From the sequence record NC_028992.1: a stretch of DNA of 34,783 nt; one strand, 5' to 3'. Of this stretch, positions 18,133 to 34,692 are shown piece by piece (within the stretch, counting starts at the first letter, position 1; each line of letters opens with the position of its first letter). The notes under the pieces were generated by a model that saw only the letters and a program-made list of their open reading frames with translations, ran no database searches and was not told where the DNA came from. Made by a program: the position numbers and the translations under genes.

Positions 18133-18137
18133 ATTTA

Positions 18138-18438: not shown

Positions 18439-18454
18439 TAAACTCCCCAGTTTA
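18439..18454 (-). repeat. 16-mer site upstream of the recombinase
   Basis: TAAACTCCCCAGTTTA on the + strand. Confidence 0.92.
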
Positions 18455-18644
18455 ACACAAAATATTGAATTTTGTGACAAAGCTATCGTGGAATTCGTTG
18501 TTTCTCTTACGGCCCTAAGCGAAACGCCGTGGAGATTTTATATTTCTCTTTCTGAGGATATAACGGGAAAAATAGAAATGCAAGATGAGAGAGGGATAAA
18601 TCAATCTCATAGGAGCAAAATTCGATTTTGGAGGTTGAAGAGAA

Positions 18645-19373
18645 ATGGATAAAGAGGAGCTAAAATTAATTATCCAAAACCTTCCCGATAACTCCCTTAA
18701 ACTTCTAGAGTATTTACAGGAAGCCAAGGAAAAGGGATGGGCTGATATTATTGATATGATTGCCGTAAAACTAGGACTAAAAGAGGAGAAAAAGAAGAGG
18801 AAGAAAGAGGAGAGCGAAATCCTCAAAAAAATTCTGAAACCCTTAGGGAAAAAGAAAATAGAGCATACATGGGATTATAGCGTCGATTTTCTCGAAGCAA
18901 AGAAAGTTTTGGTGAATGCCTATAAAGAATTGTACAATATGAATTTAATGCCATATGAGGTTTATGTTGCCATCCTCATAATTCAGCTAATTAATGGTTC
19001 TAGAATTAAGGAAGCTATTCGGGCGTTTAAGACGTTTGTGGAGTCGAATCAAAGAGAGTTTCAATTAGAGGCTGAGAAGCATGGAAATAATAGATTCTTT
19101 GTCATTCCCGATGTCGTTAAAAATAGGTTATCTTACAAATCAGTGCTAATGATTAGTGATGACAACTTAGAAGCTAGAATAAGAATGTTTACTCTGAAAT
19201 ATTTGAAGACGAACACACATTCTCTTCGTTATTCGCTAATTTCGTATTTAGCGAAAAATGCTGTAGATCCTGCATTAATCGCGAAAATCACTGGGCATAA
19301 GAAATTAGATAGGATTATAAATTATACCCAAACTAAAGATGCCATAGAAATCTTGCGTAAACTAGGGAGTTAA
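18645..19373 (+). CDS. int: Tyrosine recombinase/integrase (small, 242 aa)
   Basis: NGSRIKEA (R), HSLRY (HxxR), GHKKLDRIINY (H, catalytic Y); the stop codon lies in a variant 16-mer. Confidence 0.9.
   Translation: MDKEELKLIIQNLPDNSLKLLEYLQEAKEKGWADIIDMIAVKLGLKEEKKKRKKEESEILKKILKPLGKKKIEHTWDYSVDFLEAKKVLVNAYKELYNMNLMPYEVYVAILIIQLINGSRIKEAIRAFKTFVESNQREFQLEAEKHGNNRFFVIPDVVKNRLSYKSVLMISDDNLEARIRMFTLKYLKTNTHSLRYSLISYLAKNAVDPALIAKITGHKKLDRIINYTQTKDAIEILRKLGS
19358..19373 (+). repeat. Variant 16-mer ending the recombinase gene
   Basis: TAAACTAGGGAGTTAA; its last TAA is the int stop. Confidence 0.75.
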
Positions 19374-19396
19374 AAAACTTCACTTTTCTTATTCCC

Positions 19397-19891
19397 TCAA
19401 TTGATATTAATCAACTCTGTGATTCTTTTTTCGATTTCATTCAATTCCTTATCGACCTTGGTCTCGTCCACAGACCCCTTATCTTCTAATGCGATGACAT
19501 GATCGAGGAAGAGGTTAGACGCCTCGAATAATAATCTCAGTACCTCATTCTTCATTTGTTTGTCCTCGACTAGAACCGCCAATTTATAGAGCTTCTCAAC
19601 GTCCCTGAGTATTCTTGTGACCTGCCCATTATTGCTGTAATCTGTTTCCTTTTTTAGATCACTCCAGTCGATGTCCTTCGGCACCTTACCGTCAACTAAC
19701 GCCATTTCCCACTCCATTAAGACGTTCGAATATTTGTTTAGATACTTGATGAAGTTCTTTCTTGTAGATTCACTTTTCGACGTTTTTGCATAAAAATAGA
19801 TTTTGTCTAAGACCCATGTTAGGTCCCCTATATGTTTAGGGCTGGGCTCAGGGATTTGGACCATTTTTGGTCGAGATATCTTTTTTGTCAA
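19397..19891 (-). CDS. Hypothetical helical protein
   Basis: 164-aa ORF; TTTATATA box upstream; may start at ATG 19864. Confidence 0.7.
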   Translation of the reverse strand: MTKKISRPKMVQIPEPSPKHIGDLTWVLDKIYFYAKTSKSESTRKNFIKYLNKYSNVLMEWEMALVDGKVPKDIDWSDLKKETDYSNNGQVTRILRDVEKLYKLAVLVEDKQMKNEVLRLLFEASNLFLDHVIALEDKGSVDETKVDKELNEIEKRITELININ

Positions 19892-20023
19892 ACTAATATA
19901 TAAAGCTTTTGCCTAATCAGTTGTTACAATTCCCCTTATCCCAAAACCTGACGTAACAGTTTATTGGTGGGGGCTAACCCCCTAGCAAACAAAGTGTTGC
20001 GTCAAAAACAGGGGCTGAAGGAA

Positions 20024-20038
20024 TAAACTGGGGAGTTA
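20024..20038 (+). repeat. 16-mer site
   Basis: TAAACTGGGGAGTTA. Confidence 0.88.
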
Positions 20039-20109
20039 AATGGAAAAAATCCTTAAGAGATTAATGTGGTATCTAGGGCGTGTCGTGCTGCTAGCAGCCA
20101 GCTTTAGTC

Positions 20110-20745
20110 TTAGAATGTTAGTGTACTGCATAATGGGCACTTGTAAGTTCTTTGAAATCGTTTCAAATAATCCTCAGGGTTCTTCTGAATATCTCGGAAG
20201 TATATCCTTTGGTGGTTGTAAAATAACCCCGACCCTCCTTTCCTCAGCTTAGCCTCAGCCTCCACGAACTTTTGGAAGAACTCCGGGTTCTTTAACGCTA
20301 GTACTGCAAAATCTGCTGGTGTCTTGTAAGCAGAGCACCAACAATCGTAAGCTTTTCCGTAAATGTCATAAAGTGGGTTCTTCTTCAGACTGTTAACCTT
20401 TATGTACTCCTCTACATCTTTTTCTGAAAATTCGAAAATAGGAGCATACGTATAAACTTGAAATCTAGGATGAAGATAGAATTTTTTAGCACGACTCTTC
20501 ATCCAGCTCTCATCCTTCCTAACTCCGGTAACTAGAACTATTTCCTCTTTATTCTTATCCTTTAGAAACTCCTGCAAAGGTTGCAGCTTCAGGAAGTGTT
20601 TGCACCACCTATGTGTAATCGTCGGAAATCCGATCCTCTCAACGAGTTTAAAATAATCCTCTTTAGGAGATATAATATCCAGTGGAACGTTATATTATCC
20701 TATGAATTCTTTGTAGGGCAACGTAAAAAAATCACTCATCTTCAA
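20110..20745 (-). pseudogene. PAPS-reductase-family pseudogene lacking the PP-loop
   Basis: GFPTITHRWC...LK, VTGVRKDES and PIFEFS motifs; in-frame TAA at 20697-20695; no SGGKDS; SD AGGAGG precedes TTG 20745. Confidence 0.75.
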
Positions 20746-20810
20746 ATGAAGCCCCTCCTAATTTTCTTAGTTTTTATTTTGATCACGCTTATGATCCCTA
20801 CAGAGATAAT

Positions 20811-21509
20811 TTGTTAGAGAAGTACGGCGACTTCAAGGACTCAGAACTTTGCTTAGTTATACCTACAAGGAACGAGGCCGAAAACTTGCCCATAATCGTG
20901 GGAAAGGTTCTCCCTTACGGCTACTCAATAATTGTTGTTGATGACGAGAGCACGGATGGCACGTTCGAGCTGGCCAAGAGGTTGGCAGAAGAGGGTAAGA
21001 TATCGCTGATAGAGAGACGAGGAGTAAGGGGTTTGGGGTCCGCCATAAGGGTCGGAATTGAGAACGCCCCTTGTAAGTTCGTTGCTGTAATTGACGCCGA
21101 CCTACAGCACCCTCCTGAAACTTTACCTATTTTCCTTGAGAAGCTCAGGGCAGGCTGTGATATAGTTGTGGGTTCGAGGTATACTAAAGGAGGGAGAATA
21201 ATCGGTTGGCCTCTGAGGAGGAGGCTGATCTCCTTAGGTGCTATAATATTGGCTAAGCTACTTATACTGGAGGCGAGGAGGACGAGGGACCCAGTCTCGG
21301 GGTTTTTCGCGATCAACAAGGAGAGGGTTAAGCCCGATATAACGACTTCTGGCTACAAGGCATTACTAGACATACTAGTTAGGAACCCGAAAGCGAAGGT
21401 GTGCGACGTGCCTTATACCTTCGTGAATAGAAGCAGAGGGAAAAGCAAGTTGAGCCTCAGGGAGATCAGGGAATATTGGAACCAGATAGTGGGATATAGG
21501 AAGATATAG
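20811..21509 (+). CDS. GT2 polyprenol-phosphate hexose synthase (DPM1/GtrB-like)
   Basis: VIPTRNE, VVDDESTDGT, IDADLQHPP, VVGSRY, DPVSGF, RGKSKL motifs. Confidence 0.92.
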   Translation: MLEKYGDFKDSELCLVIPTRNEAENLPIIVGKVLPYGYSIIVVDDESTDGTFELAKRLAEEGKISLIERRGVRGLGSAIRVGIENAPCKFVAVIDADLQHPPETLPIFLEKLRAGCDIVVGSRYTKGGRIIGWPLRRRLISLGAIILAKLLILEARRTRDPVSGFFAINKERVKPDITTSGYKALLDILVRNPKAKVCDVPYTFVNRSRGKSKLSLREIREYWNQIVGYRKI

Positions 21510-21522
21510 AAAGGTTGGGAAT

Positions 21523-21960
21523 ATGAGATATTTGCAACGACTCCTGAAATTCGCCATAGTTGGGGGGCTAGGCACTATACTCAACGAGGGAGTTTTCGTC
21601 CTTTCTTCTGAGGCTATTCCCATAGCTGTTTCCCTGGCCTTAGCAATTGAGGCCTCTGTCATCTTCAATTTCGTCCTGAATGACATGTGGACCTTTAGGG
21701 ATAAGAGGAATGGATCTTTCATGGAAAGGCTTGTCAAATTTCATGCTTCCTCCTATCTAGGGAATGTGATTCAATATTTGGCGACTCTAGCGTTACTTAT
21801 CTACTTTCTCCATTTTCCCTCTATCTATCAGGCCCTACTCACATTATTCTTGGATAAATATGGGCAGTCCACCGTTTCGTTGTTACTATCCAATTTCTTA
21901 GGAATAATAGTGGGCTTCATGGTGCGATTTGCGACTAGCCTAAGGTACGTGTGGACTTAA
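21523..21960 (+). CDS. gtrA: GtrA-family flippase-like membrane protein
   Basis: KFAIVGGLGTILN...NFVLNDMWTF...; four TM helices; the stop codon is the TAA of a 16-mer. Confidence 0.88.
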   Translation: MRYLQRLLKFAIVGGLGTILNEGVFVLSSEAIPIAVSLALAIEASVIFNFVLNDMWTFRDKRNGSFMERLVKFHASSYLGNVIQYLATLALLIYFLHFPSIYQALLTLFLDKYGQSTVSLLLSNFLGIIVGFMVRFATSLRYVWT

Positions 21961-21973
21961 ACTCCCCAGTTTA
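21958..21973 (-). repeat. 16-mer site containing the gtrA stop
   Basis: TAAACTCCCCAGTTTA. Confidence 0.92.
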
Positions 21974-22223
21974 ACCCGATTACGGTCAAGCGTCCTGGTG
22001 GTTCGAATATCGTACTTTGGGTTATATTATAGGGACTCGAACTTAGTGGTTCGAAAGTCGAACCATACATGTGGTTATTCTGTAAATTTCGAACCGATAG
22101 ATACGAAATTAGAACCACGAGGGTAGGCACTAACATTCGCGACGAAAAGGAGGTGGAAAGTTTTTCTTGTCATTATGCTAACTCCTTTCACAAATGAGGG
22201 ATAGGGAGAGATTCGAGGAAGAG

Positions 22224-22340
22224 ATGGAATACATGAAAACACATAGGTATGCCATAATAGCCATCGTAATTCTATTAGGTATTGTAATAAAAATAAAAAT
22301 GATTATTAGAAAAATACTCATAAAACTAAGCGGTGGCTAA
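22224..22340 (+). CDS. 38-aa single-TM peptide not in the ORF track
   Basis: GAGGA SD; MEYMKTHRYAIIAIVILLGIVIK...; stop is 3 nt before the next ATG. Confidence 0.45.
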   Translation: MEYMKTHRYAIIAIVILLGIVIKIKMIIRKILIKLSGG

Positions 22341-22343
22341 ACG

Positions 22344-22544
22344 ATGGATCATGAAAACAAGGACAAACCTGAGGAGAGTTTTAGGGAGACCAAGGATCAT
22401 ATGACGCCCGAGGAGATGATAGGTGCAATCGTTGCTTTCGTAATTGGTATTATCGGTTTAGCCATAATTTGCACCCTCCATGATATGGGACAGATTCAGC
22501 AAGTCCTCAACACTTCTATGGTGAAAATCCCTGGCTTCATCTAA
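22344..22544 (+). CDS. Small single-TM protein
   Basis: One hydrophobic helix; GGTGG SD. Confidence 0.6.
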   Translation: MDHENKDKPEESFRETKDHMTPEEMIGAIVAFVIGIIGLAIICTLHDMGQIQQVLNTSMVKIPGFI

Positions 22545-22554
22545 ATCCTAAATC

Positions 22555-23098
22555 CTAAAGAGTGACCTGGTTCCTTTCGACGAGGCAATTGATTTTTGAG
22601 AAATACAATCTTTCATTCTTAAAGACGCTGGCTAATGCCTTGTAGAGGTCGGCGAGTGAAAACCTGTAGTGCGGATATATCAGCTCAGCGTTGTAGTAGA
22701 TAGCACACTCGCCGAATTCATCCTTGAAAAACGAGGAAGGATGGGGACGTTGCCGAAACTGATTGCGACGTATATGTATCCGACGTTTATCCCCTCTCCA
22801 AATAGATGTACCAATTCCCATGATAAAGTGCGTCAGGATCCCTGACCACGTACGGTTTTTCTACAGGGGCAATCACGTTGTTCGGCCACCTCTTTAGAGC
22901 TTCTGTCCTTGCGTCCTCAGAAACGATAAAGCTGTTCCAGAACGTCTTCATGAGTACGTCGTATACTGGCGGAACGAACTCCTTCCCTTCTTTTTCAGCG
23001 ATTATTTTCGAGATGGCTACGTTCTGGGGCTGGCCGTTCTTGTAGGCGAACTTACCCTCGAGTATTTTTTCAATAACGTCCTTAAACATCAGCGTCAT
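22555..23098 (-). CDS. Hypothetical protein, apparently broken by two homopolymer indels
   Basis: Adding one G at 22791-22794 and one T at 22727-22731 joins ORF 22787-23098, an intervening frame (INVGYIYVAISFGNVPILP) and ORF 22555-22821. Confidence 0.5.
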
Positions 23099-23861
23099 CT
23101 TCCTCGAGCTCCCTGTATTTGTCGATCTTTTGCTCGATTATCCTCCTTCTCTTCTCCATCATATCGTTCCAGATCTCACTAGGCATCCTCGGGTTCTTGA
23201 TGTAAAAGAACATCTCTGGGATGTCGACTTCCTTTAGGGTTCCCGATCGGGTTGAGGCTACTTCCCTCCTGGTGAATATTACCTTCCCGTCCTTCTTTAC
23301 CTGTACTCTCCAAGACGCTATGTCCCGGAAGAACTTAGCCAGTCCTACAAGCCTCGGAACCGTGAAGATTATCAGGGATATGAAGTCCTTCACGTAGACG
23401 AAAGCGTCGAAGAGCTCGAGCATCTTCCTCTTCTCTGCAGCTCTCTTCATGTTCCACGTTGAGCTCAGCCCTATTGCGGAAGGGTCGTCGAAAAGCACGA
23501 CGTCGTAACGTTGTCCACTCTTGACGTTTTCTAGGAGTTGCTTGAAATCGTCGACGTCAAATACTATCCTTTTGCGTACCTCATTCATGTCCTCATAGAC
23601 ATAGAACATGGACTGGATGACGTAGCTAGTTTTACCGCTTCCTGGCGGACCGTAAACGATTATTTCATCATGAATTAGTCTATCATTTGTTTTGATTGCA
23701 CTGCTTATGAACCAGACAAGTGGATTGAATCGAAAATCGTTAGCTAGCTGTTTTAGAGCTTCCCATCCTTCTCCCCTAGTTTTCGGAACCATAATTTTGT
23801 GATAAATCGGAAGTAATATGCTATAATAGTTCTGATAATCTTCTAATCGCATCATAGCCAC
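23082..23861 (-). CDS. P-loop ATPase, fusellovirus B251-like
   Basis: GPPGSGKT, VVLFDD, then LIIFTVP..K..R...WRVQV, as recalled for the B251 family. Confidence 0.8.
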   Translation of the reverse strand: MAMMRLEDYQNYYSILLPIYHKIMVPKTRGEGWEALKQLANDFRFNPLVWFISSAIKTNDRLIHDEIIVYGPPGSGKTSYVIQSMFYVYEDMNEVRKRIVFDVDDFKQLLENVKSGQRYDVVLFDDPSAIGLSSTWNMKRAAEKRKMLELFDAFVYVKDFISLIIFTVPRLVGLAKFFRDIASWRVQVKKDGKVIFTRREVASTRSGTLKEVDIPEMFFYIKNPRMPSEIWNDMMEKRRRIIEQKIDKYRELEEDDADV

Positions 23862-24018
23862 CTAGACAGTCGACCAGTTTACTCTTTCTCCTTTCTCCTG
23901 TCTTCAAGAATTGTATAATGTGGTCGATCTCCTCTTCAGTGATTAAGCCTATGCATTCCTCCTTAATGTCGTCTACTAATATACGCTCTAATATCTTGTA
24001 TATTTTCTCCTCTTCCAT
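23821..24018 (-). CDS. Small hypothetical protein
   Basis: SD-preceded ORF in a tight operon. Confidence 0.6.
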   Translation of the reverse strand: MEEEKIYKILERILVDDIKEECIGLITEEEIDHIIQFLKTGERRKSKLVDCLGGYDAIRRLSELL

Positions 24019-24021
24019 TCC

Positions 24022-24303
24022 TCATCCACCCCTGTTAGTAGTATTTTTCTCATTTTGCTTATTTTCCTTGTTGACGCGAGATTCGACCAGCTTCGTTATC
24101 CTCATTATCTTTATTACTACGAGAAGGAACACTATACTACTTATTGTAAGCGACGCGAAATCGTTGTACAAATAGGAGAGAACGGCCATGGCCATCGCCA
24201 TAACCGCAAACAAAATTTCGAAACGAACAATGGGAAAGTATCGCTTTTCTACGATAATATAGACGATCAAGAGTATTGCGGAAACGAAATCGAATATCAC
24301 CAT
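24022..24303 (-). CDS. Three-TM small membrane protein
   Basis: Hydrophobic helices with a polar C-terminal tail. Confidence 0.7.
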   Translation of the reverse strand: MVIFDFVSAILLIVYIIVEKRYFPIVRFEILFAVMAMAMAVLSYLYNDFASLTISSIVFLLVVIKIMRITKLVESRVNKENKQNEKNTTNRGG

Positions 24304-24668
24304 ACATTGACACCGAGATTCGGATATACGACACTCTCAGTTACCGCGATTTCACTGAGTATATCAATCAGTAATTTCGTTGTCCTTTCCATGTAGTCGT
24401 CGATGCTTTCCCCTTCCTTCCTTTCTAGCTCCCTCATTATTTCATTCAATCCCTTCCCTATCTTCCTGGTGATGTAGTCCGTCTTGTCCATGTGTGCTAG
24501 CAGGGATTTCGTTGCACTCACAGTGGCAAGGAATGCAGCTTTCCGTTGCGGGAACGGTATGCTGAAATTGTTTACCTCGTGGATTATCTTGTTTAGTAAA
24601 TGAGTTGCGAACTCCCTGTAGGATCTTAAAGGAGTTAGCTCAATGCCTGCATTCATTCCAGCTGACAT
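24297..24668 (-). CDS. Hypothetical helical protein
   Basis: Overlaps neighbours in the operon. Confidence 0.65.
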   Translation of the reverse strand: MSAGMNAGIELTPLRSYREFATHLLNKIIHEVNNFSIPFPQRKAAFLATVSATKSLLAHMDKTDYITRKIGKGLNEIMRELERKEGESIDDYMERTTKLLIDILSEIAVTESVVYPNLGVNVW

Positions 24669-25383: not shown

Positions 25384-25423
25384 ATGAAGGAAAAAGAATT
25401 GGGATAAGAAAAATGTTGAACCC

Positions 25424-26895: not shown

Positions 26896-26946
26896 AAGAG
26901 TAGGGTGAATTCGAATAAGAAAAACTTGGAACCGATTAAGAGGGGA

Positions 26947-26962
26947 TTAACTGGGGAGTTTA
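26947..26962 (+). repeat. 16-mer site containing the stop of 26960-27727
   Basis: TTAACTGGGGAGTTTA. Confidence 0.9.
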
Positions 26963-27727: not shown

Positions 27728-27830
27728 CTGACGAACAATAAGAAATGTGATAATAAAAAGATATTATAAACGCTGTACGTTACGTTACGTACAATCAGCT
27801 ATTATTATTGAGCAAGGGCATTAGTTATCA

Positions 27831-27925
27831 CTTGCTCAATTTTCTCATCGCTCTTCCTGAATATTATTACTCTATTCTCTAAATCAAGATATGGTGTGTA
27901 TTCATTTAAAAATGATACTATTTGT
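27831..27925. repeat. Copy of 25618-25712 (73 bp identical, then degenerate)
   Basis: 27831-27903 equals 25618-25690. Confidence 0.92.
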
Positions 27926-28630: not shown

Positions 28631-28667
28631 TCTAACCTGACCTCCTCCCCCGAAATGCTAGTTTGTA

Positions 28668-29610
28668 TCACTCCCACCATGTCATTAGATTGCTTGTCTG
28701 TGAGACTTTCCGTTCCTTTAACCTCTTTTGTTGTAATTTCTCCTCAATCTTTTCCCTTAACTTTGTCCTCAATCTCTTGGCATCTTCTCTCTCAATTATC
28801 TCTATCTGCGGTTTTCCGAAAAGTGCGTTAGCACCAATCCTTTCTAAGATTACATCCTTTAACTCTAAGTCTATTTCATAGCCTATCGCATCCCTTTTCA
28901 ATTCGTTAGCGACCTTTAACGTAGTGCCAGTCCCAGCAAAGGGGTCTAGAACTGTATCCCCTACGTAAGAGTAAAGCGTAATAATTCTCCTAGCTAGCTC
29001 CTCGGGAAACGGTGCTGTATATTTCGAGTATTTATCCTGAGGCAGTACGTGACCTATTTCCCACACACTCAAATACCACTTCTCCCTTTGAAATTTATTC
29101 ACATCTATTTTACTTTCCTCCTTATTCCTAGGGACAAATTTCCCTGGCTTCTTAAACACTACTATTTCTTCATAAATGAAATCTGGATAATAATAAAGAG
29201 GGTAAGGATGTTGGAAGGAGAACTCCACTCCTCCTACTAATCCTGATGTAAAATTCTGGTTTTTTCCAAATGATCCTTTCTTGATATTTAAAACCCAAGC
29301 TTTGCATAATTTTTATCAAATCTGCAACTATAGGGTAAAGGTCCCCATCTACCCTCATATCAGCTACAACGAAAACCGCGACCCTGCCTTCCTCTAGGAC
29401 CCTGAAAATCTCTTTTCCCACTCCTTTTAGCAGGCTCAGGTAATCGTCATAAGAAGGAAAAAGGTCTGGGAAGTCAAAAGGTGCGTTATAGTAAGGAGGA
29501 GAAGTTAGGACCAAACCCACACTATTATCCTTAACTTCTTTCATATTTCTAGAGTCTCCAAATATAATTCTGACCTCCCTGGCCCTAAAAGGCTGATTTG
29601 TTGTTATCAT
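28668..29610 (-). CDS. Beta-class N4-C/N6-A DNA methyltransferase with a 1-nt frameshift
   Basis: TSPPY in ORF 29170-29610; DPFAGTGTT in ORF 28668-29228; removing one C at 29213-29214 gives GVLL-QHPYP. Confidence 0.85.
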
Positions 29611-30629
29611 AACGCCACCTCGAGCTTTCCTGGCACTAGGGATGGCTCTCCCAGCTCATGTCCGCATCTAGGACACTTTCCTCCGTACATTGCCTTTACT
29701 TCCGAAGGTAGTTTTATGCCGAAAACCTCCTGTCCTACTCTCTCAAATCTATAAAGCTCGAACCCGCAGTTCTTACATTTGTACCTTATAGGCCCTAGTA
29801 TGTTTAGGATTTCCTTGTATCTCATCCTCAAAACTAATTCTGATATATTCAGTGTTTCCGCTATTTCCTTTTGTGTTTTATTAATGTCCATCAACTTAGA
29901 TGCAATATAAACTGCAGCGGCACCGAATGCTAAACGGCTCTTTCCGCTAGTTAATCCCCGTTTTTGCATTTGCTCCACTATTTCTACTACTTTAGTTTCT
30001 ACGGTCAGTGGTAAGTTCAATTTGTTTAATATTATTGGAATATATTTTGTTGGTGTATTCACTTTAGGTTTAAAATATGGCACGACTTCATTGATCCTTT
30101 TTAAAGCCTTCCAGACTGCCCTTTCGGAAAGGTCAAACCTCGCTTTAAGCTCCTGTAAACTCAAGGGAATGTTGTTGATTTGGGACGCATAATATAATAC
30201 AACAGCGATCAGTGCATCGGGCTTAATCCTCATATAGGATTCATCCCTAAATAATTTTTTCACTATGATTGCAGCGGTCTCCTTTACGTGTTCTGGCAAG
30301 CCTAGCTTCGAAGCCTCAGCGTTTAGCCTCGATAGATATGTTACTAATTTTTTATCCTTGTATGAAACCCTAACCGAATTTTGTAATCTTCGCATTTTTA
30401 TTAGTTTAATCTTGTCTTCTACATTTCTATATCCTATTTTTCCTATTTTAGTCGTGAGTCCTTGGTCGTGAACCTTTAAACTAAGCCTTGATCCTACTCT
30501 TTCCCGCTCTAGTCTATCTGTGTCACTGAATGTCCTCCATTCTGGGCCAGGGTCAACTACCCTTTCCTCTATGACCTCTCCCGTCTCGGTGTCTATGAGC
30601 TCTCCTCTTTCGGCGTCGAAGACTATCAT
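29607..30629 (-). CDS. tfb: Transcription factor B homologue with an extra C-terminal Zn ribbon
   Basis: FDAERGE..TETGEV..., B-reader GPEWRTF, HDQGLTT, two cyclin folds, TQKEIA HTH; then CKNC...CPRC. Confidence 0.92.
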   Translation of the reverse strand: MIVFDAERGELIDTETGEVIEERVVDPGPEWRTFSDTDRLERERVGSRLSLKVHDQGLTTKIGKIGYRNVEDKIKLIKMRRLQNSVRVSYKDKKLVTYLSRLNAEASKLGLPEHVKETAAIIVKKLFRDESYMRIKPDALIAVVLYYASQINNIPLSLQELKARFDLSERAVWKALKRINEVVPYFKPKVNTPTKYIPIILNKLNLPLTVETKVVEIVEQMQKRGLTSGKSRLAFGAAAVYIASKLMDINKTQKEIAETLNISELVLRMRYKEILNILGPIRYKCKNCGFELYRFERVGQEVFGIKLPSEVKAMYGGKCPRCGHELGEPSLVPGKLEVAL

Positions 30630-30640
30630 GCTCTCACCCT

Positions 30641-30796
30641 TTAAACTCCCCAGTTTTCTCTAGTTTTTCTTACATTATTTAGATAAAACTCGAGGGCTTC
30701 TCTGACTACATCACTCCTCGAAAGCCTACGGTTCATAGCGTACGTATCGAGTTTTATCAGGAGATCATCGGGAATTTTGACCGTTATAACCCTCAT
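30641..30796 (-). CDS. Ribbon-helix-helix (CopG-like) regulator not in the ORF track
   Basis: MRVITVKIPDDLLIKLDTYAMNRRLSRSDVVREALEFYL...ENWGV*; SD AGGTGA; the stop lies in a 16-mer. Confidence 0.88.
   Translation of the reverse strand: MRVITVKIPDDLLIKLDTYAMNRRLSRSDVVREALEFYLNNVRKTRENWGV
30642..30657 (-). repeat. 16-mer site between RHH and tfb
   Basis: TAAACTCCCCAGTTTT. Confidence 0.9.
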
Positions 30797-30801
30797 TTTT
30801 C

Positions 30802-31020
30802 TCACCTAGTATTTTCCTCTTCTATTATTTTGAGAACACGGAATAGATTAGCCCCAATCTTATCTGACAAGAATGACGATGTCTCTAATCCTTGTTTCGC
30901 CCTGTCGAGATTCTTCAGAATTACATCCATTTTTATCATATGTACTAGGGCTTGCAACCTTCCTGCGTCCTCCTCGAGTTCATTTAATAGTTCTCGAATT
31001 TCTTCTTCTTTGCTAATCAT
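30802..31020 (-). CDS. Small coiled-coil protein
   Basis: Strong GAGGAGG SD; heptad pattern. Confidence 0.7.
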   Translation of the reverse strand: MISKEEEIRELLNELEEDAGRLQALVHMIKMDVILKNLDRAKQGLETSSFLSDKIGANLFRVLKIIEEENTR

Positions 31021-31382
31021 TCCTCCTCCTCCTCTAACTCTTCTTCCTTTGCCAATTGTTCGAATACCTGCTCCTTCTTCTCGAGAAGACTAACGAGCTC
31101 TAACGTTTGTAAGGCCTCCTCCTTAGCCTTGTTGAGGACCCATCGCCTTGCCGTCGCGTTGAAGAGGGCTACGTCGATAATGGTTTTATCCGAAAGGTGA
31201 ATCTTCCCCTTTTTGGCTTTGGCTATGGCCACAGGTGTGATTGCATCTTTCAGCTCCTTACTGAACCTCCTGGCGAATTCTTCCCTCGATTTTTTGCTTA
31301 GCCTTTCAACCACCTGAGAAAAAAGGGCAATAACTTTTTCTTCCTCTCCTTCTTCTCTTGGGGAGCCAATTGCAACGGCCAT
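31017..31382 (-). CDS. Hypothetical protein with acidic tail
   Basis: Canonical AAAAAC-TTTAAATA promoter upstream. Confidence 0.7.
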   Translation of the reverse strand: MAVAIGSPREEGEEEKVIALFSQVVERLSKKSREEFARRFSKELKDAITPVAIAKAKKGKIHLSDKTIIDVALFNATARRWVLNKAKEEALQTLELVSLLEKKEQVFEQLAKEEELEEEEE

Positions 31383-31391
31383 TTCTTCTCA

Positions 31392-31427
31392 ATGACTTTT
31401 GAGTCACTAGGTATATTTAAAGTTTTT
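31392..31427 (-). promoter_or_regulatory. Canonical BRE/TATA with a downstream TGAC-N6-GTCA inverted repeat (possible operator)
   Basis: Minus strand AAAAACTTTAAATATA; plus strand TGACTTTTGAGTCA between the TATA box and the ATG. Confidence 0.5.
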
Positions 31428-31466
31428 GCCTGAATTTTAGGGCCAAATCCCGTTACTCAGTACGGC

Positions 31467-31772
31467 TCAGTAAACTGGGGAGTTTAACACCTCTACGCCA
31501 TCCATGATTTTCTCAATGCCGACTTCCCTGAGAGCCTCGACCAACTTCTTTCCTTTATCGGTGAGAACGGCGAAGATCTTTCTCCCCTTTTCATGATATT
31601 CTATGAGACCTAGCTTGAGGAGGCTTTCCTCGACCGAAGTATAGTAAACCGTCGAGGACACTCCTGATAACTGCCATAGCTCAGATAGATAGAGCGGTCC
31701 ATGCTGGTCTAGCGTGTCGAGTACCCTATATAGATGCTCACATCTTAGGGGATTTGACAGGTTCCGGGGCAT
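31467..31772 (-). CDS. Winged-HTH regulator
   Basis: GLIEY....GRKIFAVLTDKGKKLV wing motif; the C-terminal NSPVY is encoded by a 16-mer. Confidence 0.8.
   Translation of the reverse strand: MPRNLSNPLRCEHLYRVLDTLDQHGPLYLSELWQLSGVSSTVYYTSVEESLLKLGLIEYHEKGRKIFAVLTDKGKKLVEALREVGIEKIMDGVEVLNSPVY
31471..31486 (+). repeat. 16-mer site
   Basis: Exact match. Confidence 0.92.
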
Positions 31773-31831
31773 TTTTCTANTTTAACATCTGTCAGTGTTA
31801 CCTTATAAGTCATTAGTTAGCATCGGTCTAG

Positions 31832-31847
31832 AAAACTCCCCAGTTAA
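31832..31847 (-). repeat. 16-mer site
   Basis: AAAACTCCCCAGTTAA. Confidence 0.85.
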
Positions 31848-31874
31848 TTCCACGTTACGCATGACTTGATGGGN

Positions 31875-31890
31875 TAAACTGGGGAGTTTA
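31875..31890 (+). repeat. 16-mer site
   Basis: Exact match. Confidence 0.92.
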
Positions 31891-31961
31891 ACNCNNNTGA
31901 AGNCNAAACCCCAAACCAATCCAACCGAAATCTATATTAACTACAGTGTGAGGCTCAGCTT

Positions 31962-32240
31962 ATGAGAGCGGCGATGGAAAAAGGATCACAATCAAAATTT
32001 CTATTTAATGCGATGAGTCCCGAGGAATATACTAAGGCTAAGGAGTTCTATGAGTTCCTTAAGAGCATCACTAAATGCACGCATGGGTATCTCAGAATTG
32101 ACCGGAAGAAGCTAGTTGACATGACAGCCGCTTTTATGGAGGTTTCTCCCTATGAGGCCCACCAGATCCTCACAAAAATGATGCAATACGGATGGATTCA
32201 CACGATAGACAACCATTATATAATAGTTAACATAGATTGA
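31962..32240 (+). CDS. Small winged-helix-like protein
   Basis: VSPYEAHQILTKMMQYGWI helix pattern. Confidence 0.6.
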   Translation: MRAAMEKGSQSKFLFNAMSPEEYTKAKEFYEFLKSITKCTHGYLRIDRKKLVDMTAAFMEVSPYEAHQILTKMMQYGWIHTIDNHYIIVNID

Positions 32241-32265
32241 GGANCGTATTTACNAGAAAGNGGGT

Positions 32266-32281
32266 TAAACTGGGGAGTTTA
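32266..32281 (+). repeat. 16-mer site
   Basis: Exact match. Confidence 0.92.
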
Positions 32282-32694
32282 ACACAAATGAAGATTGAAA
32301 AGGGGAAAAATAAAGGGGCTTAAAGCATTCGCCTGCTCTATTGCCNCCATTGCATGCCNCCTGNGNGCCTNTCCTATTACAGTACATGGGCTTACAGTAG
32401 CCTCTTANGGCACTACTATACTATTATTACAATATTCTATTGTTATTCAATAGACTACTTACAGTATACTAGATAGGGGCAAGGCTAGTCCACGATCCGT
32501 TCACGCNCTTGGAAACGGTTTTTGNCGTNCCGTTTTTCTCTACGTATAGAACGTTAGCTTTGAAAAAGTTTCTGTTCGCTTGCTTTGAAATTGTAAAGAT
32601 GTTTTATTCACGTGGGGGTTTNCTTTCAGCTAGCTNAAATAAACTAAACGGCAAATGTCTGCTTTGGTTCTCAAAACTTTGAAATTTTTATCAT

Positions 32695-32710
32695 TAAACT
32701 GGGGAGTTTT
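32695..32710 (+). repeat. 16-mer site
   Basis: TAAACTGGGGAGTTTT. Confidence 0.88.
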
Positions 32711-32749
32711 TTCAGTTTTTTNCTTCACTTTTAGCGGGATTTTTTGAAA

Positions 32750-32765
32750 TAAACTGGGGAGTTTA
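32750..32765 (+). repeat. 16-mer site
   Basis: Exact match. Confidence 0.92.
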
Positions 32766-32838
32766 ACGGTACCTTGAATATTTATTACTAAAATGAGAAA
32801 AAAGGTCGATAGAATCAATTCAGCTAGGCCACGACTCT

Positions 32839-33511
32839 TTAGCCTCCTGGGAACTTCGGCTTATACGCCCAAGCTTCTAGTATATGCTTTGGGACTTCAA
32901 AACCTAGACCCTCTATCACTTTCTTCAGGAAGAGGAATATCCTGTCGAATTTGAGCGTGAACTTCGTCACTTCCACCAGCTTTTGTAACCTAAAAAAAAT
33001 CTTGCTGTACATCCACTGTTTCAGAGAGTCTACCGTCGTGAAGAACTCCACTTTATGTTTCTTCAGTTCCTCCTGGGCTCCAGGAGTAAACGCGTACGCT
33101 ACTATTGCGGGATAGGTGTGATATCCCTTCTCTCTAAGCTTGTTCACTATTTTGTAGATTTGGTTGAACTTCCACGGTAACTGGGCTGGCACAATGGGCT
33201 TCGAGGTTTGTAGCGAGAAGTAAACAACGAATGCCGTCTTCCTCTCCTTTTTCGTCCAATCTATCCGTCTGTGGGTCCTCGAGCTTGATGACGAGGATTC
33301 TGCCTCCGTACCCGTCTTCTTTAATTTCTACGGCTCCGTTCTCGTCCTTTATCCTCGATTTTGCCCACGCTGGCATGCTTATCAGATCGGCGACATCCTT
33401 AACCCCAAGTAGATCCTTCCTTAGGCTGTTAAACGTCCTCACGATCTCTCCTTTCATCTCGTATATCTTCAGCAGGAGATCTTCACGCCCCATATCAGAC
33501 CCCTCCGTCAT
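32839..33511 (-). CDS. Restriction-endonuclease-like (PD-(D/E)xK/Mrr-like) protein split by one extra A
   Basis: Shortening the A5 run at 33248-33252 joins the two ORFs (LDEKERKTAFVVYFSLQTS...AIVAYAFTPGAQEEL). Confidence 0.45.
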
Positions 33512-33836
33512 CCGCGTAGAAGTTTATTTGAGCTAGGATGAAGACAAGGATATAGACTAGCGTAAAGCTTAAAAGCATGTTTGTTAATACTTTACTTGAC
33601 CTCATTAGATCTTTCAGCCCCCTTCCGCCCATTTCCTTTTCCTCTATCTTATATGGTAACCAGGTTTAAAGTCTTTTCTCCCATAATCCCCTTTCTTTAT
33701 ACCTGAAGAGGTTCTAAGACAAAATACCGAACTTCAACTCAAGGATCTCAGAATTACTGCTATAGCTAATTAATGTACTTTGCCCTTTAGCAGAACTAGA
33801 TAAGATTTAAATTTGCTTTATACTTCAACTACATTC

Positions 33837-34238
33837 GTGAGCCAGGCCAAACTCAGGAGGAAGAAAAGAAGTAAGTATGAGATAATATACAACGTCTTAG
33901 AGCAATGCCAGACTGGATCAAAGAAAACCTGGGTTATGTACAAGGCAAATCTGTCTTACGACTTAACGACAAGCTATCTCGACGAACTCATAAAGATGGG
34001 CCTCGTGGAGCCCAAAGACGGTCTATACTATATAACCGAAAAGGGAAAGCAGTTCCTAGAACTCCTCAAGGTCTGGATACAGAAGAAGTCAGAACTCGAC
34101 GACATAGCCAAGATGATTAAGGAGTTCCTCCCTGAAGAGAAAAAGAAGAGAGAGAAGAAGGCAAGCGATACTCAGCCAGCAGAAGCCCCTACTCAGGCCC
34201 CCCAACAAGCCCCACCACCTAGCCCACCAATCAGCTGA
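33837..34238 (+). CDS. Archaeal winged-HTH regulator (COG3432-like) with Pro/Gln tail
   Basis: RSKYEII..VL...KTWVMYKANLSY....YL..L...GLV.....YYITEKG; GTG 33837 follows TTTAAA. Confidence 0.85.
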   Translation: MSQAKLRRKKRSKYEIIYNVLEQCQTGSKKTWVMYKANLSYDLTTSYLDELIKMGLVEPKDGLYYITEKGKQFLELLKVWIQKKSELDDIAKMIKEFLPEEKKKREKKASDTQPAEAPTQAPQQAPPPSPPIS

Positions 34239-34253
34239 GACGGTTGAGGGGCC

Positions 34254-34679
34254 GTGAGCCAGGTGCAAATTATCGGAACCCAAGACAAATTCGTTTTACC
34301 TTCAGGTAAAGAGCTAACGCTTTTCGACGTGCTTCGCTTCTGCTACGGTTTATCAGAATCTGAAATTAATATCCTGATGACACTCCTCAAGTCGAGTCCT
34401 AATCCCAAGTTGGCCGAGGATATAGAACAAGAGCTTCAGGTTAGTAAGGCTATGGTAAACAAGAGCCTCAATAAGTTGCTGAGCTTGGGGCTGATTAAGA
34501 GAACTAAGGAGGCAGGTAATAGAACTGGAAGACCAAGATATGTCTACTTCATTCCCGACCCTGTAGAGTTCAAGGCTAAGCTGGCTAAGGAAATCGAGGA
34601 CTGCACGAATAACATTAGAAATGTCGTAACGACGCAGTTTGTCCCTCCATTTTCCTCACCACATGCTTTTCAAGGTTAA
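34254..34679 (+). CDS. Lrs14/AbfR1-family regulator
   Basis: LPSGKE...DVLRFCYGLS, SKAMVNKSLNKL, GRPRYVY; the stop is the TAA of a 16-mer. Confidence 0.82.
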   Translation: MSQVQIIGTQDKFVLPSGKELTLFDVLRFCYGLSESEINILMTLLKSSPNPKLAEDIEQELQVSKAMVNKSLNKLLSLGLIKRTKEAGNRTGRPRYVYFIPDPVEFKAKLAKEIEDCTNNIRNVVTTQFVPPFSSPHAFQG

Positions 34680-34692
34680 ACTGGGGAGTTTA
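34677..34692 (+). repeat. 16-mer site containing the Lrs14-like stop
   Basis: Exact match. Confidence 0.92.

What the first reader, a model, noticed from the sequence alone, without database searches (positions are those of the whole stretch)
18439..34692. Tyrosine recombinase plus a genome-wide set of palindromic 16-bp sites: candidate integron/shufflon-like module-shuffling system
Seen: 15 copies of TAAACT-GGGG-AGTTTA (6-7-bp inverted arms, asymmetric 4-bp core) at 4549, 4771, 18439, 19358 (variant), 20024, 21958, 26947, 30642, 31471, 31832, 31875, 32266, 32695, 32750 and 34677. None was found in the structural block from 4.8 to 18.4 kb. They bracket coherent accessory modules: [int], [ORF164], [PAPS pseudogene + GT2 + gtrA], [ATPase operon], [membrane protein + 2 MTases + TFB], [RHH operon], [wHTH]. 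Known: I recall this 16-mer being described as a recombination motif in Sulfolobus pING/pNOB8-type conjugative plasmids; two arms around an asymmetric core is the layout of tyrosine-recombinase sites. Inference: the adjacent 242-aa recombinase, which shows no tRNA-derived attP, acts on these sites to invert, excise or acquire gene modules in a virus.
Basis: partly seen in the sequence, partly recalled or inferred. Interest (0 to 1): 0.85.

Follow-up and report, generated by a model that had tools for sequence, protein, structure and literature searches.

The report
Plasmid-type 16-bp repeat in archaeal virus
A hot-spring archaeal virus carries 15 copies of the 16-base repeat that marks Sulfolobus conjugative plasmids; they sit at gene-module borders where relatives differ, but the virus's own integrase is very unlikely to be the enzyme that uses them.

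Summary
The window is the complete circular genome of Sulfolobales virus YNP2. All 15 sites are at the stated coordinates: 8 exact, 5 with one mismatch, 2 with two (0.05 expected by chance).

The 16-mer is the repeat of Sulfolobus conjugative plasmids: 8-12 exact copies in pKEF9 and pNOB8, and 14-21 copies at up to two mismatches in each of five plasmids.

In the plasmids, nearly identical mosaic blocks start or stop at it: 12 of 26 block ends against 2 expected. In YNP2-like metagenomic relatives, several module junctions lie exactly at a site.

The sites are under purifying selection, even inside a coding sequence, and show no strand rule relative to transcription. They therefore act as DNA.

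The link to the integrase is not supported. The 242-aa Int is a core gene of bicaudavirus-like viruses. About 271 kb of Int-bearing relatives (ATV, SMV1, SMV2, YNP1 and four contigs) have no array, and the plasmids use an unrelated integrase.

What co-varies with the array is a plasmid-type regulatory module: wHTH gp54, a putative HTH/coiled-coil protein gp53, and an RHH.

Best reading: these are conserved protein-binding sites of a plasmid-derived module. Because they stay identical between diverged elements, recombination crossovers land on them. This makes YNP2 a new member of a known kind, of moderate interest.

The parts
4549..4564 (+). Exact motif inside the gp12 CDS (antisense; encodes V-N-S-P-V-Y)
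   Evidence: all 5 codons are identical in 5 relatives, against a background of 0.31 (P about 0.003).
4771..4786 (+). 1-mismatch motif inside the gp12 CDS (antisense; encodes G-N-S-P-V-Y)
   Evidence: Kept in L008 and L028, lost in L024, L005 and YNP1.
18439..18454 (-). Exact motif with T-rich flanks ('class A'), between the structural block and the int module
   Evidence: Homology to YNP1 and L060 stops 34 bp before the site and restarts 46 bp after it.
19358..19373 (+). 2-mismatch variant forming the last codons and stop of int (RKLGS*); probably a coding look-alike
20024..20039 (+). 1-mismatch motif between gp30 (truncated PAPS reductase) and gp29
   Evidence: Conserved with its promoter region in L060, while the gene next to it is replaced.
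21958..21973 (-). Exact motif overlapping the gp32 (GtrA-like) stop codon
   Evidence: An 87-bp unit ending at the motif recurs in a different context in L060; homology stops at the motif edge.
26947..26962 (+). 1-mismatch motif overlapping the gp46 stop codon, upstream of gp45
   Evidence: L041 lacks 26963-29605, and homology resumes exactly at the motif edge.
30642..30657 (-). 1-mismatch motif in the 3' end of gp51, 12 nt upstream of GGTGAG and the ATG of gp50 ('class B')
   Evidence: Homology of the TFB gene to YNP1 and L011 ends at this site.
31471..31486 (+). Exact motif encoding the C-terminus (NSPVY) of wHTH gp54
31832..31847 (-). 2-mismatch motif in the divergent gp54/gp55 intergenic region
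   Evidence: Conserved in L041, L043 and L044.
31875..31890 (+). Exact motif in the divergent gp54/gp55 intergenic region
32266..32281 (+). Exact motif 26 bp after the gp55 stop codon
32686..32815 (+). Non-coding stretch holding sites 32695 and 32750; homologous to plasmid and fusellovirus-like DNA
   Evidence: 87% identical to L017 3630-3756, 85% to pNOB8 16233-16302, 81% to U50k L011 8183-8256.
34677..34692 (+). Exact motif starting with the stop codon of gp60 (Sta1/Lrs14 family)
31017..31382 (-). gp53: the protein family that co-varies with the motif array; putative HTH plus long C-terminal helix
   Evidence: present in every array-bearing element. (absent elsewhere). AlphaFold2 pLDDT 88. 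Foldseek top hits are XRE-type HTH proteins, but E is at least 1.2.
31467..31772 (-). gp54: about 100-aa winged-helix (MarR-like) protein, upstream partner of gp53
   Evidence: Pfam winged-helix families. The same gene pair is found in L017, L011 and the plasmids.
30641..30805 (-). gp51: RHH protein of the aCcr1 family, last small gene of the plasmid-like operon
   Evidence: NCBIfam 62 bits against a cutoff of 60. 48% identical to pNOB8 CopG. Listed for YNP2 in PMC9976878.
31974..32240 (+). gp55: homologue of the pKEF9 gene 15590..15877, which sits in the plasmid's motif cluster
   Evidence: 55% identical over 87 aa.
18645..19373 (+). Int, a 242-aa tyrosine recombinase. Adjacent to the sites, but judged not to be their cognate enzyme
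   Evidence: Pfam PF00589, 27.5 bits. Family distribution.

Best explanation
The 16-mer is the signature dispersed repeat of the Sulfolobales conjugative-plasmid backbone. YNP2 and a few relatives acquired a plasmid-type regulatory module, and the array of sites came with it. The module consists of wHTH gp54, gp53, gp52, RHH gp51, gp55, and a non-coding stretch homologous to the plasmids' repeat-rich region.

Shown:
- The sites work as double-stranded DNA. They have no fixed orientation relative to transcription, and the RNA hairpin melts at host temperature.
- They are kept by purifying selection.
- They lie at gene borders.

Inferred:
- Each site is bound by a dimeric helix-turn-helix protein encoded by the module. 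The two 6-bp half-sites lie 10 bp apart centre to centre, which is one helical turn.
- gp53 is the best candidate, because it is the one family that co-varies with the array.
- The bound sites act as boundary or operator elements for transcription or for replication control.

Why junctions fall there: the sites are the only stretches that stay base-for-base identical between diverged plasmids and viruses. Recombination crossovers therefore land on them, most simply through host homologous or short-homology recombination. This explains why mosaic blocks and accessory modules begin or end at them.

The 242-aa Int is the ordinary integrase of bicaudavirus-like viruses. Its likely role is chromosomal integration, as inferred for ATV. 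It is not the enzyme of this repeat system.
For: Same motif in plasmids:
- pKEF9 has 8 exact copies and 14 within 2 mismatches; pNOB8 has 12 and 21.
- pARN3, pARN4 and pHVE14 each have 14-16 sites.

Restricted distribution:
- In IMG/VR, multi-copy arrays occur only in YNP2, one 50-kb YNP-like contig and one fusellovirus-like contig.
- In genomes, multi-copy loci occur only in Sulfolobales, and most carry plasmid-protein homologues.

Selection:
- Motif positions are 88% identical among YNP2, L041, L043, L044 and L054. Other intergenic DNA is 68% identical and CDS is 73%.
- Inside gp12, all 5 motif codons are identical in 5 relatives (background 0.31, P about 0.003). YNP1 encodes a similar peptide with other codons.

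DNA-level action:
- Orientation relative to the nearest gene is 5:8 in YNP2, 8:2 in pKEF9 and 8:9 in pNOB8.
- The hairpin free energy is about 0 at 75-80 C.

Crossovers at the motif:
- pKEF9 versus pARN3 identity is 30-60% upstream and 100% from the motif onward for about 1 kb, inside a CDS.
- 12 of 26 ends of blocks at least 95% identical lie within 30 bp of a motif, against 2.0 expected.
- Virus junctions lie at 26947, 21958 and 19358 and 30642.

Co-variation:
- gp53 homologues are present in all array-bearing elements.
- They are absent from every other GenBank virus and from about 271 kb of Int-bearing relatives without arrays.
- The gp53 model has pLDDT 88, and its best structural neighbours are XRE-type operator-binding proteins.

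Int:
- The Int family is conserved in array-free viruses.
- ATV integration is attributed to its integrase (PMC12662068).
Against: - No binding experiment exists, and none can be run here.
- The Foldseek matches for gp53 are not significant (E at least 1.2).
- gp53 homologues are only 23-56% identical to YNP2 gp53 (46-56% in the other viral lineages, 23-34% in the plasmids), and the wHTH partners are even more diverse. Yet the 16-mer, including its asymmetric GGGG centre, is invariant. That fits a conserved host factor, or an asymmetric reader, better than a symmetric dimer of a fast-evolving protein.
- In pKEF9 and pNOB8 no motif lies in the promoter region of the wHTH/gp53 genes, so simple autoregulation is not the rule.
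- Some blocks are flanked by motifs on both sides: pKEF9 21127-21670; pHVE14 21867-23562; the int module in YNP2 and L058. A dedicated site-specific system would also produce this pattern.
- In the virus, the excess of junctions at motif-bearing gene borders over motif-free gene borders is modest. My hand count is about 8 of 11 against about 9 of 24.
Confidence: 0.5

Rival explanations
1. The adjacent 242-aa tyrosine recombinase binds the 16-bp sites and inverts, excises or captures the modules between them, like an integron or shufflon.
For: - Int is intact, with R, HxxR, H and Y candidate residues in the sequence.
- The int module is bracketed by motif copies in two unrelated contexts: YNP2 18439/19358 and L058 5118/6045.
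- It is inverted relative to the structural block between YNP1 and YNP2.
- No tRNA-like attP was detected.
Against: - Int homologues of 74-83% identity sit in ATV, SMV1, SMV2, YNP1 and four contigs (about 271 kb) with no array. The 3 motif-like hits found there include 2 that are the int stop-codon look-alike.
- The plasmids with the same invariant motif have an unrelated integrase.
- The fusellovirus-like contig L017 also has the array.
- The 'site' at the int 3' end codes for a conserved RKL[GSA][SAD]* peptide and has a mismatch in the invariant core.
- The left boundary of the int module lies 46-56 bp away from the motif, and that interval is not homologous between contexts.
- The 6-4-6 geometry is atypical for tyrosine-recombinase cores (established knowledge).
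Confidence: 0.06
2. The sites are true site-specific recombination or cassette-exchange sites shared by Sulfolobales plasmids and viruses. They are processed by a recombinase other than Int, for example a host enzyme such as XerA recruited by module proteins.
For: - The junctions are crisp and lie at the motif.
- Several blocks are flanked on both sides.
- The asymmetric core is strictly conserved, which gives the sites polarity.
- Motif copies accompany inserted DNA in the structural block of relatives: L008 618 and L060 1516.
- Three modules (I, A, B) are each flipped in place between YNP2 and YNP1/U50k.
Against: - No candidate recombinase is shared by the elements.
- Many block ends have a motif on one side only.
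- The insertion 26963-29605 has a motif at one end only.
- The breakpoints of modules A and B at 22576, 25354 and 25923 have no motif.
- Conserved gene order across the sites in the plasmids' small-gene operon is unlike a variable cassette array.
Confidence: 0.15
3. The sites bind a conserved host protein that mobile elements exploit (replication, segregation, chromatin boundary, or DNA transfer or packaging). They do not bind a protein encoded by the element.
For: - The 16-mer is invariant across plasmids, bicaudavirus-like and fusellovirus-like elements and across host genera: Sulfolobus, Stygiolobus, Metallosphaera. The element-encoded candidate proteins are divergent.
- Sites cluster in the plasmids' repeat-rich, gene-poor region. 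From my recollection of Greve et al. 2004, this region was proposed as the replication origin.
- The homologous stretch is YNP2 32686-32815.
Against: - Arrays are all-or-none among close relatives and track the plasmid-type module.
- Host-chromosome copies lie mostly in plasmid-like DNA.
Confidence: 0.15
4. The sites are transcription terminators or insulators, or RNA elements at operon junctions.
For: - Six of 13 sites lie within 40 nt of a stop codon.
- Class A sites are embedded in T-tracts, and class B sites lie 5-12 nt before a GGTGAG Shine-Dalgarno sequence.
- Orientation in pKEF9 is 8:2 sense.
Against: - There is no orientation rule in YNP2 (5:8) or pNOB8 (8:9).
- The hairpin is unstable at 75-80 C.
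- Sites are selected inside CDSs on the antisense strand.
- There is no Rfam match.
Confidence: 0.08

Closest known systems
16-bp repeat ('recombination motif') of Sulfolobus conjugative plasmids (pNOB8, pING, pKEF9, pHVE14, pARN3/4)
   Same: - The sequence is identical.
- The density is similar, about 1 site per 2 kb.
- Sites lie at gene borders and occasionally inside CDSs.
- Mosaic breakpoints fall at the sites.
- The neighbouring small-gene operon is homologous (wHTH, gp53-like, RHH), and a non-coding stretch with two sites is homologous.
   Different: - The carrier is a bicaudavirus-like virus genome without the TraG/TrbE conjugation genes and without the pNOB8-type integrase.
- Orientation relative to genes is mixed.
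- The array is absent from the closest sequenced relative, YNP1.
Short conserved boundary or linker sequences at module junctions of mosaic bacteriophages (modular evolution of lambdoid phages)
   Same: Short sequences shared between otherwise diverged genomes sit at gene borders and coincide with the ends of exchanged modules. No dedicated recombinase is required.
   Different: - Here the sequence is one invariant 16-mer present 15-20 times per element.
- It is shared by plasmids and two virus groups.
- It is under selection in its own right.
Integron attC/attI system and the R64 shufflon (tyrosine-recombinase systems that shuffle modules)
   Same: A tyrosine recombinase gene lies next to an array of repeated palindromic sites at gene ends. 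Modules differ between relatives.
   Different: - The recombinase does not co-vary with the sites.
- The sites are 16-bp perfect repeats rather than 57-141-bp imperfect attC sites or 19-bp sfx sites inside one gene.
- Genes between the sites have their own promoters and lie in both orientations.
- No population-level inversion has been shown (see Membership tests).
Bicaudavirus integrase (ATV ORF241 family)
   Same: YNP2 Int is 74% identical to ATV ORF241 and 80-83% identical to the YNP1 and SMV1 integrases, and has the same length.
   Different: Nothing notable. The C-terminal codons happen to resemble the motif in YNP1 and YNP2.

Membership tests
Sulfolobales conjugative-plasmid 16-bp repeat system | Sequence TAAACTGGGGAGTTTA present in many copies per element | tested here: met
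   YNP2 has 8 exact copies and 15 within 2 mismatches. pKEF9 has 8/14 and pNOB8 12/21.
Sulfolobales conjugative-plasmid 16-bp repeat system | Rearrangement or mosaic breakpoints coincide with the repeat | tested here: met
   - Plasmids: 12 of 26 block ends within 30 bp against 2.0 expected, plus a crisp crossover.
- Virus: junctions at 26947, 21958, 30642 and 19358. Other breakpoints lack a motif.
Sulfolobales conjugative-plasmid 16-bp repeat system | Carried on the conjugative-plasmid backbone (TraG/TrbE-like ATPases, pNOB8-type integrase, small-gene operon) | tested here: inconclusive
   Only the small-gene operon (gp51, gp53, the gp54-type wHTH), gp55 and a non-coding stretch are shared. 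There are no conjugation genes, and the integrase is of a different type.
Tyrosine-recombinase core site | Two inverted recombinase-binding arms (usually 7-13 bp) around a 6-8-bp overlap region | tested here: not met
   The arms are 6 bp (7 in some copies) around a 4-bp centre. The flanks beyond the arms are not symmetric. The expected geometry comes from established knowledge (loxP, FRT, dif, lambda core).
Tyrosine-recombinase core site | Sites co-occur with their cognate recombinase | tested here: not met
   Int homologues occur without arrays in about 271 kb of relatives. Arrays occur with an unrelated integrase in the plasmids.
Integron | Promoterless cassettes in one orientation, each ending in an imperfect-palindrome attC of about 57-141 bp, downstream of attI/Pc next to intI | tested here: not met
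   The sites are 16-bp near-perfect copies in both orientations (11 on +, 4 on -). The genes between them lie on both strands and form multi-gene operons.
Shufflon (Rci/sfx) | Clustered inverted repeats inside alternative C-terminal segments of one gene, with inversion variants in a population | tested here: not met
   The sites are spread over 30 kb between unrelated genes. Population variants could not be tested, because no reads are available.
SSV-type (partitioning) archaeal integrase | attP matching a host tRNA gene lies inside the int gene | tested here: inconclusive
   ARAGORN and Rfam find no tRNA-like segment in the int region or anywhere in the window. A short att site could escape these tools, and no integrated copy was examined.
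XRE/Cro-type HTH operator-binding proteins (for gp53) | Five-helix HTH fold, with sequence or structure similarity above noise | tested here: inconclusive
   The AlphaFold2 model is confident (pLDDT 88). The top Foldseek hits are HigA, ClgR and C.Esp1396I, but with E of 1.2-8. Pfam gives HTH_19 for only one member, at E = 0.088.

The most novel reading that the evidence does not exclude
The 16-mer may be a common 'exchange currency' of Sulfolobales mobile elements. On this reading it is a polar site at which conjugative plasmids, bicaudavirus-like viruses and fusellovirus-like elements swap gene modules. The exchange would use a dedicated, non-integrase mechanism: module-encoded HTH proteins (gp53/gp54 type) would mark the sites and recruit a host recombinase. 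This would be an archaeal, cross-element counterpart of cassette-exchange systems.
Probability: 0.12. Interest if true: 0.85.

Novelty: new member of a known kind. Interest (0 to 1): 0.5.

Why it matters
The function of this repeat in Sulfolobus conjugative plasmids has been open since it was noticed about 25 years ago.

Three findings here bear on that question:
- The complete array, together with a plasmid-type regulatory module, also sits in a bicaudavirus-like virus and in a fusellovirus-like contig.
- The array is selected at the DNA level.
- It marks crisp exchange junctions.

Together these document a concrete route of gene flow between archaeal plasmids and viruses.

The co-variation analysis removes the obvious suspect, the integrase. 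It nominates one small protein family (gp53-like, with its wHTH partner) for direct binding tests in the tractable S. islandicus/pKEF9 system.

Tried and rejected
Literature:
- The two primary papers on the motif (Stedman 2000, PMC94828; Greve 2004, PMC2685578) and a review (PMC4402960) are not held.
- Full-text searches for the 16-mer and for 'recombination motif(s)' found nothing.
- The plasmid claim therefore rests on my own counts, plus one sentence in PMC4872121.

Searches that gave nothing useful:
- The search for related loci with a single protein returned only the window itself. An alignment query was needed.
- The attP/tRNA search was negative. A T-arm-like string near 21958 gave no Rfam hit.
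- A PDB sequence search with Int found nothing.
- The bacterial-type promoter and terminator scan was uninformative for an archaeal virus.
Only the Sulfolobales loci are multi-copy.

Ideas rejected:
- RNA hairpin or terminator. There is no strand rule, and the stem melts at 75-80 C.
- aCcr1-type RHH gp51 as the binder. RHH homologues also occur in array-free SMV1 and YNP1, and the published aCcr1 box is a 9-bp palindrome.
- The inversion of the int module between YNP1 and YNP2 as proof of site-specific inversion. It is a single case, the right-hand 'site' is a coding look-alike, and YNP1 lacks a second site.

Full report
IDENTITY OF THE WINDOW
- The window is the whole 34,783-bp circular genome of Sulfolobales virus YNP2 (NC_028992/KP282680). 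It is a metagenome-assembled relative of the large tailed spindle viruses (100% match; annotation).
- Its closest sequenced relative is YNP1, which shares a collinear structural block (window 129-18405).

THE OBSERVATION
- TAAACTGGGGAGTTTA occurs 8 times exactly and 15 times with up to two mismatches. Shuffles give 0.00 and 0.05 expected.
- Eleven copies have GGGG on the + strand. Four (18439, 21958, 30642, 31832) have it on the - strand.
- No site with up to 2 mismatches lies between 4.8 and 18.4 kb.
- Of the 13 sites with up to one mismatch, only 2 lie deep inside a CDS (random 83%). Six lie within 40 nt of a stop codon (random 13%). Several supply the stop codon itself (gp32, gp46, gp60, int).

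THE RECALLED PLASMID CONNECTION IS CORRECT
- I could not read the primary papers, so I counted the motif directly.
- Exact copies / copies within 2 mismatches: pKEF9 8/14, pNOB8 12/21, pARN3 6/14, pARN4 4/16, pHVE14 4/15.
- In 2.9 million IMG/VR contigs, exact multi-copy arrays occur in only three places:
  - YNP2 itself;
  - a 50-kb YNP-like contig (U50k; at least 10 exact copies);
  - a 12.4-kb fusellovirus-like contig (L017, which encodes a B277-family protein).
- In species-representative genomes, the multi-copy loci are all Sulfolobales: Metallosphaera yellowstonensis, Stygiolobus, Sulfolobales HS-7 and Acd1, and Sulfolobus UBA167. Most of these loci encode conjugative-plasmid proteins.
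- The bacterial hits are single and match the number expected by chance for a 16-mer.

ANATOMY
Aligning about 70 sites from YNP2, the plasmids and the two viral contigs shows that all 16 positions are 91-100% conserved, including the asymmetric GGGG centre. Two recurring contexts appear:
- Class A: TTGAATTTTT-N5-motif-TTCAATTTT. It is intergenic and T-rich. Examples are window 18439 and 32695.
- Class B: the motif lies 5-12 nt before GGTGAG and the ATG of the next gene in an operon. An example is window 30642 before gp50, and the same arrangement is seen in pKEF9 and pNOB8.

Orientation relative to the nearest gene is 5:8 in YNP2, 8:2 in pKEF9 and 8:9 in pNOB8, so there is no strand rule. The possible RNA hairpin is worth -5.8 to -7.8 kcal/mol at 37 C but about 0 at 75-80 C. 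Rfam finds nothing. The element therefore acts as double-stranded DNA.

SELECTION
- Across YNP2 and four metagenomic relatives (L041, L043, L044, L054; 70-88% DNA identity), motif positions are 88% identical. Other intergenic DNA is 68% identical and coding DNA 73%. All five sites of that region keep their place and orientation.
- The two sites in gp12 lie in a real, conserved gene (77-86% protein identity in relatives). Read on the antisense strand, they encode (V/G)-N-S-P-V-Y.
- At site 4549, all five codons are identical in five relatives. The background rate for codons with a conserved amino acid is 0.31, giving P of about 0.003. The next codon, whose third base lies outside the motif, varies.
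- YNP1 encodes a similar peptide with different codons and has no motif there.
- The same reading frame (NSPV) recurs at the C-terminus of gp54 and the N-terminus of plasmid gp53-like proteins.

RECOMBINATION AT THE MOTIF: PLASMIDS
- Between pKEF9 and pARN3, identity is 30-60% upstream of the motif at pKEF9 12752 and 100% from the motif onward for about 1 kb. This lies inside the TrbE-like CDS.
- pKEF9 21127-21670 (97% identical to pARN3) is flanked by motifs at 21090 and 21674.
- pHVE14 21867-23562 (99.3% identical to pARN3/4) is flanked by motifs on both sides.
- Over all blocks at least 95% identical, 12 of 26 ends lie within 30 bp of a motif, against 2.0 expected. None of 5000 randomisations reached that number. 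The pARN3 and pARN4 ends are not independent.

RECOMBINATION AT THE MOTIF: THE VIRUS
- L041 (Ga0081534_100257; 83-88% identical) lacks window 26963-29605 (gp46-gp49). There, the TFB gene's stop codon is followed after 17 bp by the motif and then gp45. Homology to YNP2 resumes exactly at the motif edge.
- The gp48/gp49 methyltransferases of that insert are 88-92% identical in protein to a Stygiolobus chromosome segment that lies next to plasmid-like genes.
- An 87-bp unit ending at site 21958 recurs in L060 inside the structural block. Homology stops at the motif edge.
- L058/L059 share with YNP2 only the int module (18502-19373, 90%). They have a motif 56 bp before it and one at its end.
- Homology of the TFB gene to YNP1 and U50k ends at site 30642.
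- Relative to YNP1 and U50k, three modules of YNP2 are each flipped in place: int, A = 22576-25354, and B = 25923-32236.
- Other breakpoints (22576, 25354, 25923, 28725, 29564, 29605) have no motif. By my hand count, about 8 of 11 motif-bearing gene borders coincide with a breakpoint, against about 9 of 24 motif-free borders. The excess over 'being intergenic' is therefore modest in the virus.

THE INTEGRASE
- Int has a Pfam Phage_integrase match over its C-terminal half (27.5 bits) and plausible R, HxxR, H and Y residues.
- It belongs to a tight family of about 100 proteins, all about 242 aa and at least 70% identical. Members include ATV ORF241, ATV2, SMV1, SMV3 and YNP1.
- ATV (62.7 kb), SMV1, SMV2, YNP1 and four metagenomic contigs total about 271 kb. 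Together they contain three motif-like hits, two of which are the int stop-codon region, and no gp53/gp54 homologue.
- The int 3' end codes for RKLGS* in YNP1 and YNP2, RKLSA*, RKLAS* and RKLST* in others, and RKLAD* in ATV. Site 19358 is therefore best read as a coding look-alike, and it carries a mismatch in the invariant core.
- The plasmids' integrase (418 aa) shares only 27 residues around box II with Int. No Sulfolobus plasmid matched Int by tblastn.
- Unrelated recombinases would not be expected to recognise one identical 16-mer.
- ATV integration into the host chromosome is attributed to its integrase (PMC12662068), which gives the family an ordinary role.
- I found no tRNA-like attP, but that is weak negative evidence.
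- A conserved non-coding element of about 130 bp upstream of int (18497-18629) is shared with YNP1, SMV1 and U50k. It is a better place to look for att or regulatory function.

WHAT CO-VARIES WITH THE ARRAY
Window 30.6-32.8 kb is a plasmid-type module:
- gp53 is homologous to pKEF9 22583..22891 and its counterparts in pHVE14, pARN3/4, pNOB8, a Stygiolobus plasmid-like contig (L109), L017 and U50k.
- gp55 is homologous to pKEF9 15590..15877, a gene inside that plasmid's motif cluster.
- gp51 (aCcr1-family RHH) is homologous to pNOB8 CopG.
- 32686-32815, which holds two sites, is 81-87% identical to non-coding DNA of L017, pNOB8 and U50k.

In every array-bearing element, a winged-helix gene of about 100 aa accompanies the gp53-like gene. 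gp53 and gp54 have no homologue in any other GenBank virus.

The AlphaFold2 model of gp53 (pLDDT 88) has five short helices plus a 45-residue C-terminal helix. Its best PDB neighbours are XRE-type operator-binding proteins (HigA, ClgR, C.Esp1396I), but with E of 1.2-8. This is suggestive only.

MECHANISM
- Shown: the repeat is a selected DNA element of the plasmid backbone; it is present in YNP2 together with a plasmid-type module; it coincides with recombination junctions; it does not track Int.
- Inferred (about 0.5): the sites are bound by a module-encoded dimeric HTH protein, with gp53 as the first candidate. The half-sites lie one helical turn apart. Exchange at the sites is a by-product of their being islands of perfect identity for host recombination.
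- Against this inference: the invariance of the asymmetric core and the divergence of the candidate proteins. These leave room for a host factor (0.15) or a dedicated non-Int site-specific system (0.15).

COMPARISON AND NOVELTY
- This is the known conjugative-plasmid repeat, found here in a virus together with part of the plasmid's regulatory module.
- It does not meet the defining features of integrons, shufflons or canonical tyrosine-recombinase core sites (see Membership tests).
- I found no paper that mentions the motif in YNP2 or in other viruses, but the key older literature was not searchable.
- I rate it a new member of a known kind, with interest 0.5. The main value is a testable candidate binder for a long-unexplained repeat and a documented plasmid-virus exchange route.

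Noticed in passing
window 30641-30805 (-): gp51 is an aCcr1-family RHH cell-cycle regulator homologue (NCBIfam 62 bits against a cutoff of 60). PMC9976878 already lists aCcr1 homologues in YNP1 and YNP2. The published aCcr1 box is a 9-bp palindrome, not the 16-mer.
   Followed up: partly
window 26963-27011 (-): A GC-rich hairpin element (CCTCGCCCTTTAGGGCGGGGAGG) abuts motif 26947. It is 86-96% identical to copies of about 30-45 bp found in SMV1 at both ends of its IS200/605 element and at several other places there. Similar hairpins lie next to the motif in L060 (about 1550-1580) and beside the degenerate site in U50k. It may be a transposon-end or MITE remnant.
   Followed up: partly
window 25618-25712 and 27831-27925: A 95-bp direct repeat, 97% identical, with a third copy of 63% identity at 25438-25532. 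It brackets gp44-gp46 and motif 26947. L041 has a different gene order here, with gp46-like genes after gp43. The repeat is a likely substrate for homologous deletion or rearrangement.
   Followed up: partly
window 31780-32722 and 5259-7056: The 31 N bases of the assembly fall in two clusters. 23 are in the motif-dense, mostly non-coding stretch 31.8-32.7 kb, and 8 are in 5.3-7.1 kb. This points to population heterogeneity in the source metagenome.
   Followed up: no
window 14442-14880 and 16448-17000 (inside gp26, 14284-18132, -): The 1285-aa structural-block protein contains nine tandem 33-bp repeats (five of them identical), 21/24-bp repeats, and further units of 42-207 bp.
   Followed up: no
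L058 1678-4758 (Ga0315298_1016145): A contig whose Int is 93% identical to YNP2's carries Csf3- and RAMP-family genes (type IV CRISPR-Cas-like) next to a full-length PAPS reductase, upstream of int.
   Followed up: no
window 28668-29610 (gp48, gp49); L067 2-784 (Stygiolobus sp. CP850M): The two DNA methyltransferase genes of the YNP2-specific insert are 88-92% identical in protein to a Stygiolobus chromosome segment. That segment lies next to conjugative-plasmid-like genes and a motif copy.
   Followed up: partly
window 18497-18629: A conserved non-coding element of about 130 bp lies upstream of int. It contains a repeated AGCGAAA and is shared with YNP1, SMV1 and U50k. In U50k it is not followed by an int gene.
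   Followed up: partly
window 4549-4564, 4771-4786, 31471-31486; plasmid gp53-like genes (e.g. pKEF9 22611): When the motif lies antisense inside a gene, it is always read in the frame that gives N-S-P-V(-Y). This is seen twice in gp12, at the C-terminus of gp54, and at the N-terminus of plasmid gp53-like proteins.
   Followed up: partly
L089 (JAPDLT010000016.1, 'Ca. Rehaiarchaeum fermentans' MAG, 7.7 kb): This contig carries four motif copies (up to 1 mismatch) but no recognisable conjugative-plasmid protein. It may be a mis-binned Sulfolobales mobile element.
   Followed up: no
window 33813-34238 and 34263-34679 (+): gp59 is an Sso10a-family chromatin-protein homologue (92 bits). gp60 is a Sta1/Lrs14-family regulator (110 bits). 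The virus therefore encodes several host-type DNA-binding proteins next to the motif-rich region.
   Followed up: no
L008 146-1637 (U50k) and L060 1384-2456: Two relatives carry insertions of about 1.1-1.5 kb at the gp24/gp25 junction of the structural block. Each insertion contains an exact motif copy. YNP2 and YNP1 have no insertion there.
   Followed up: partly
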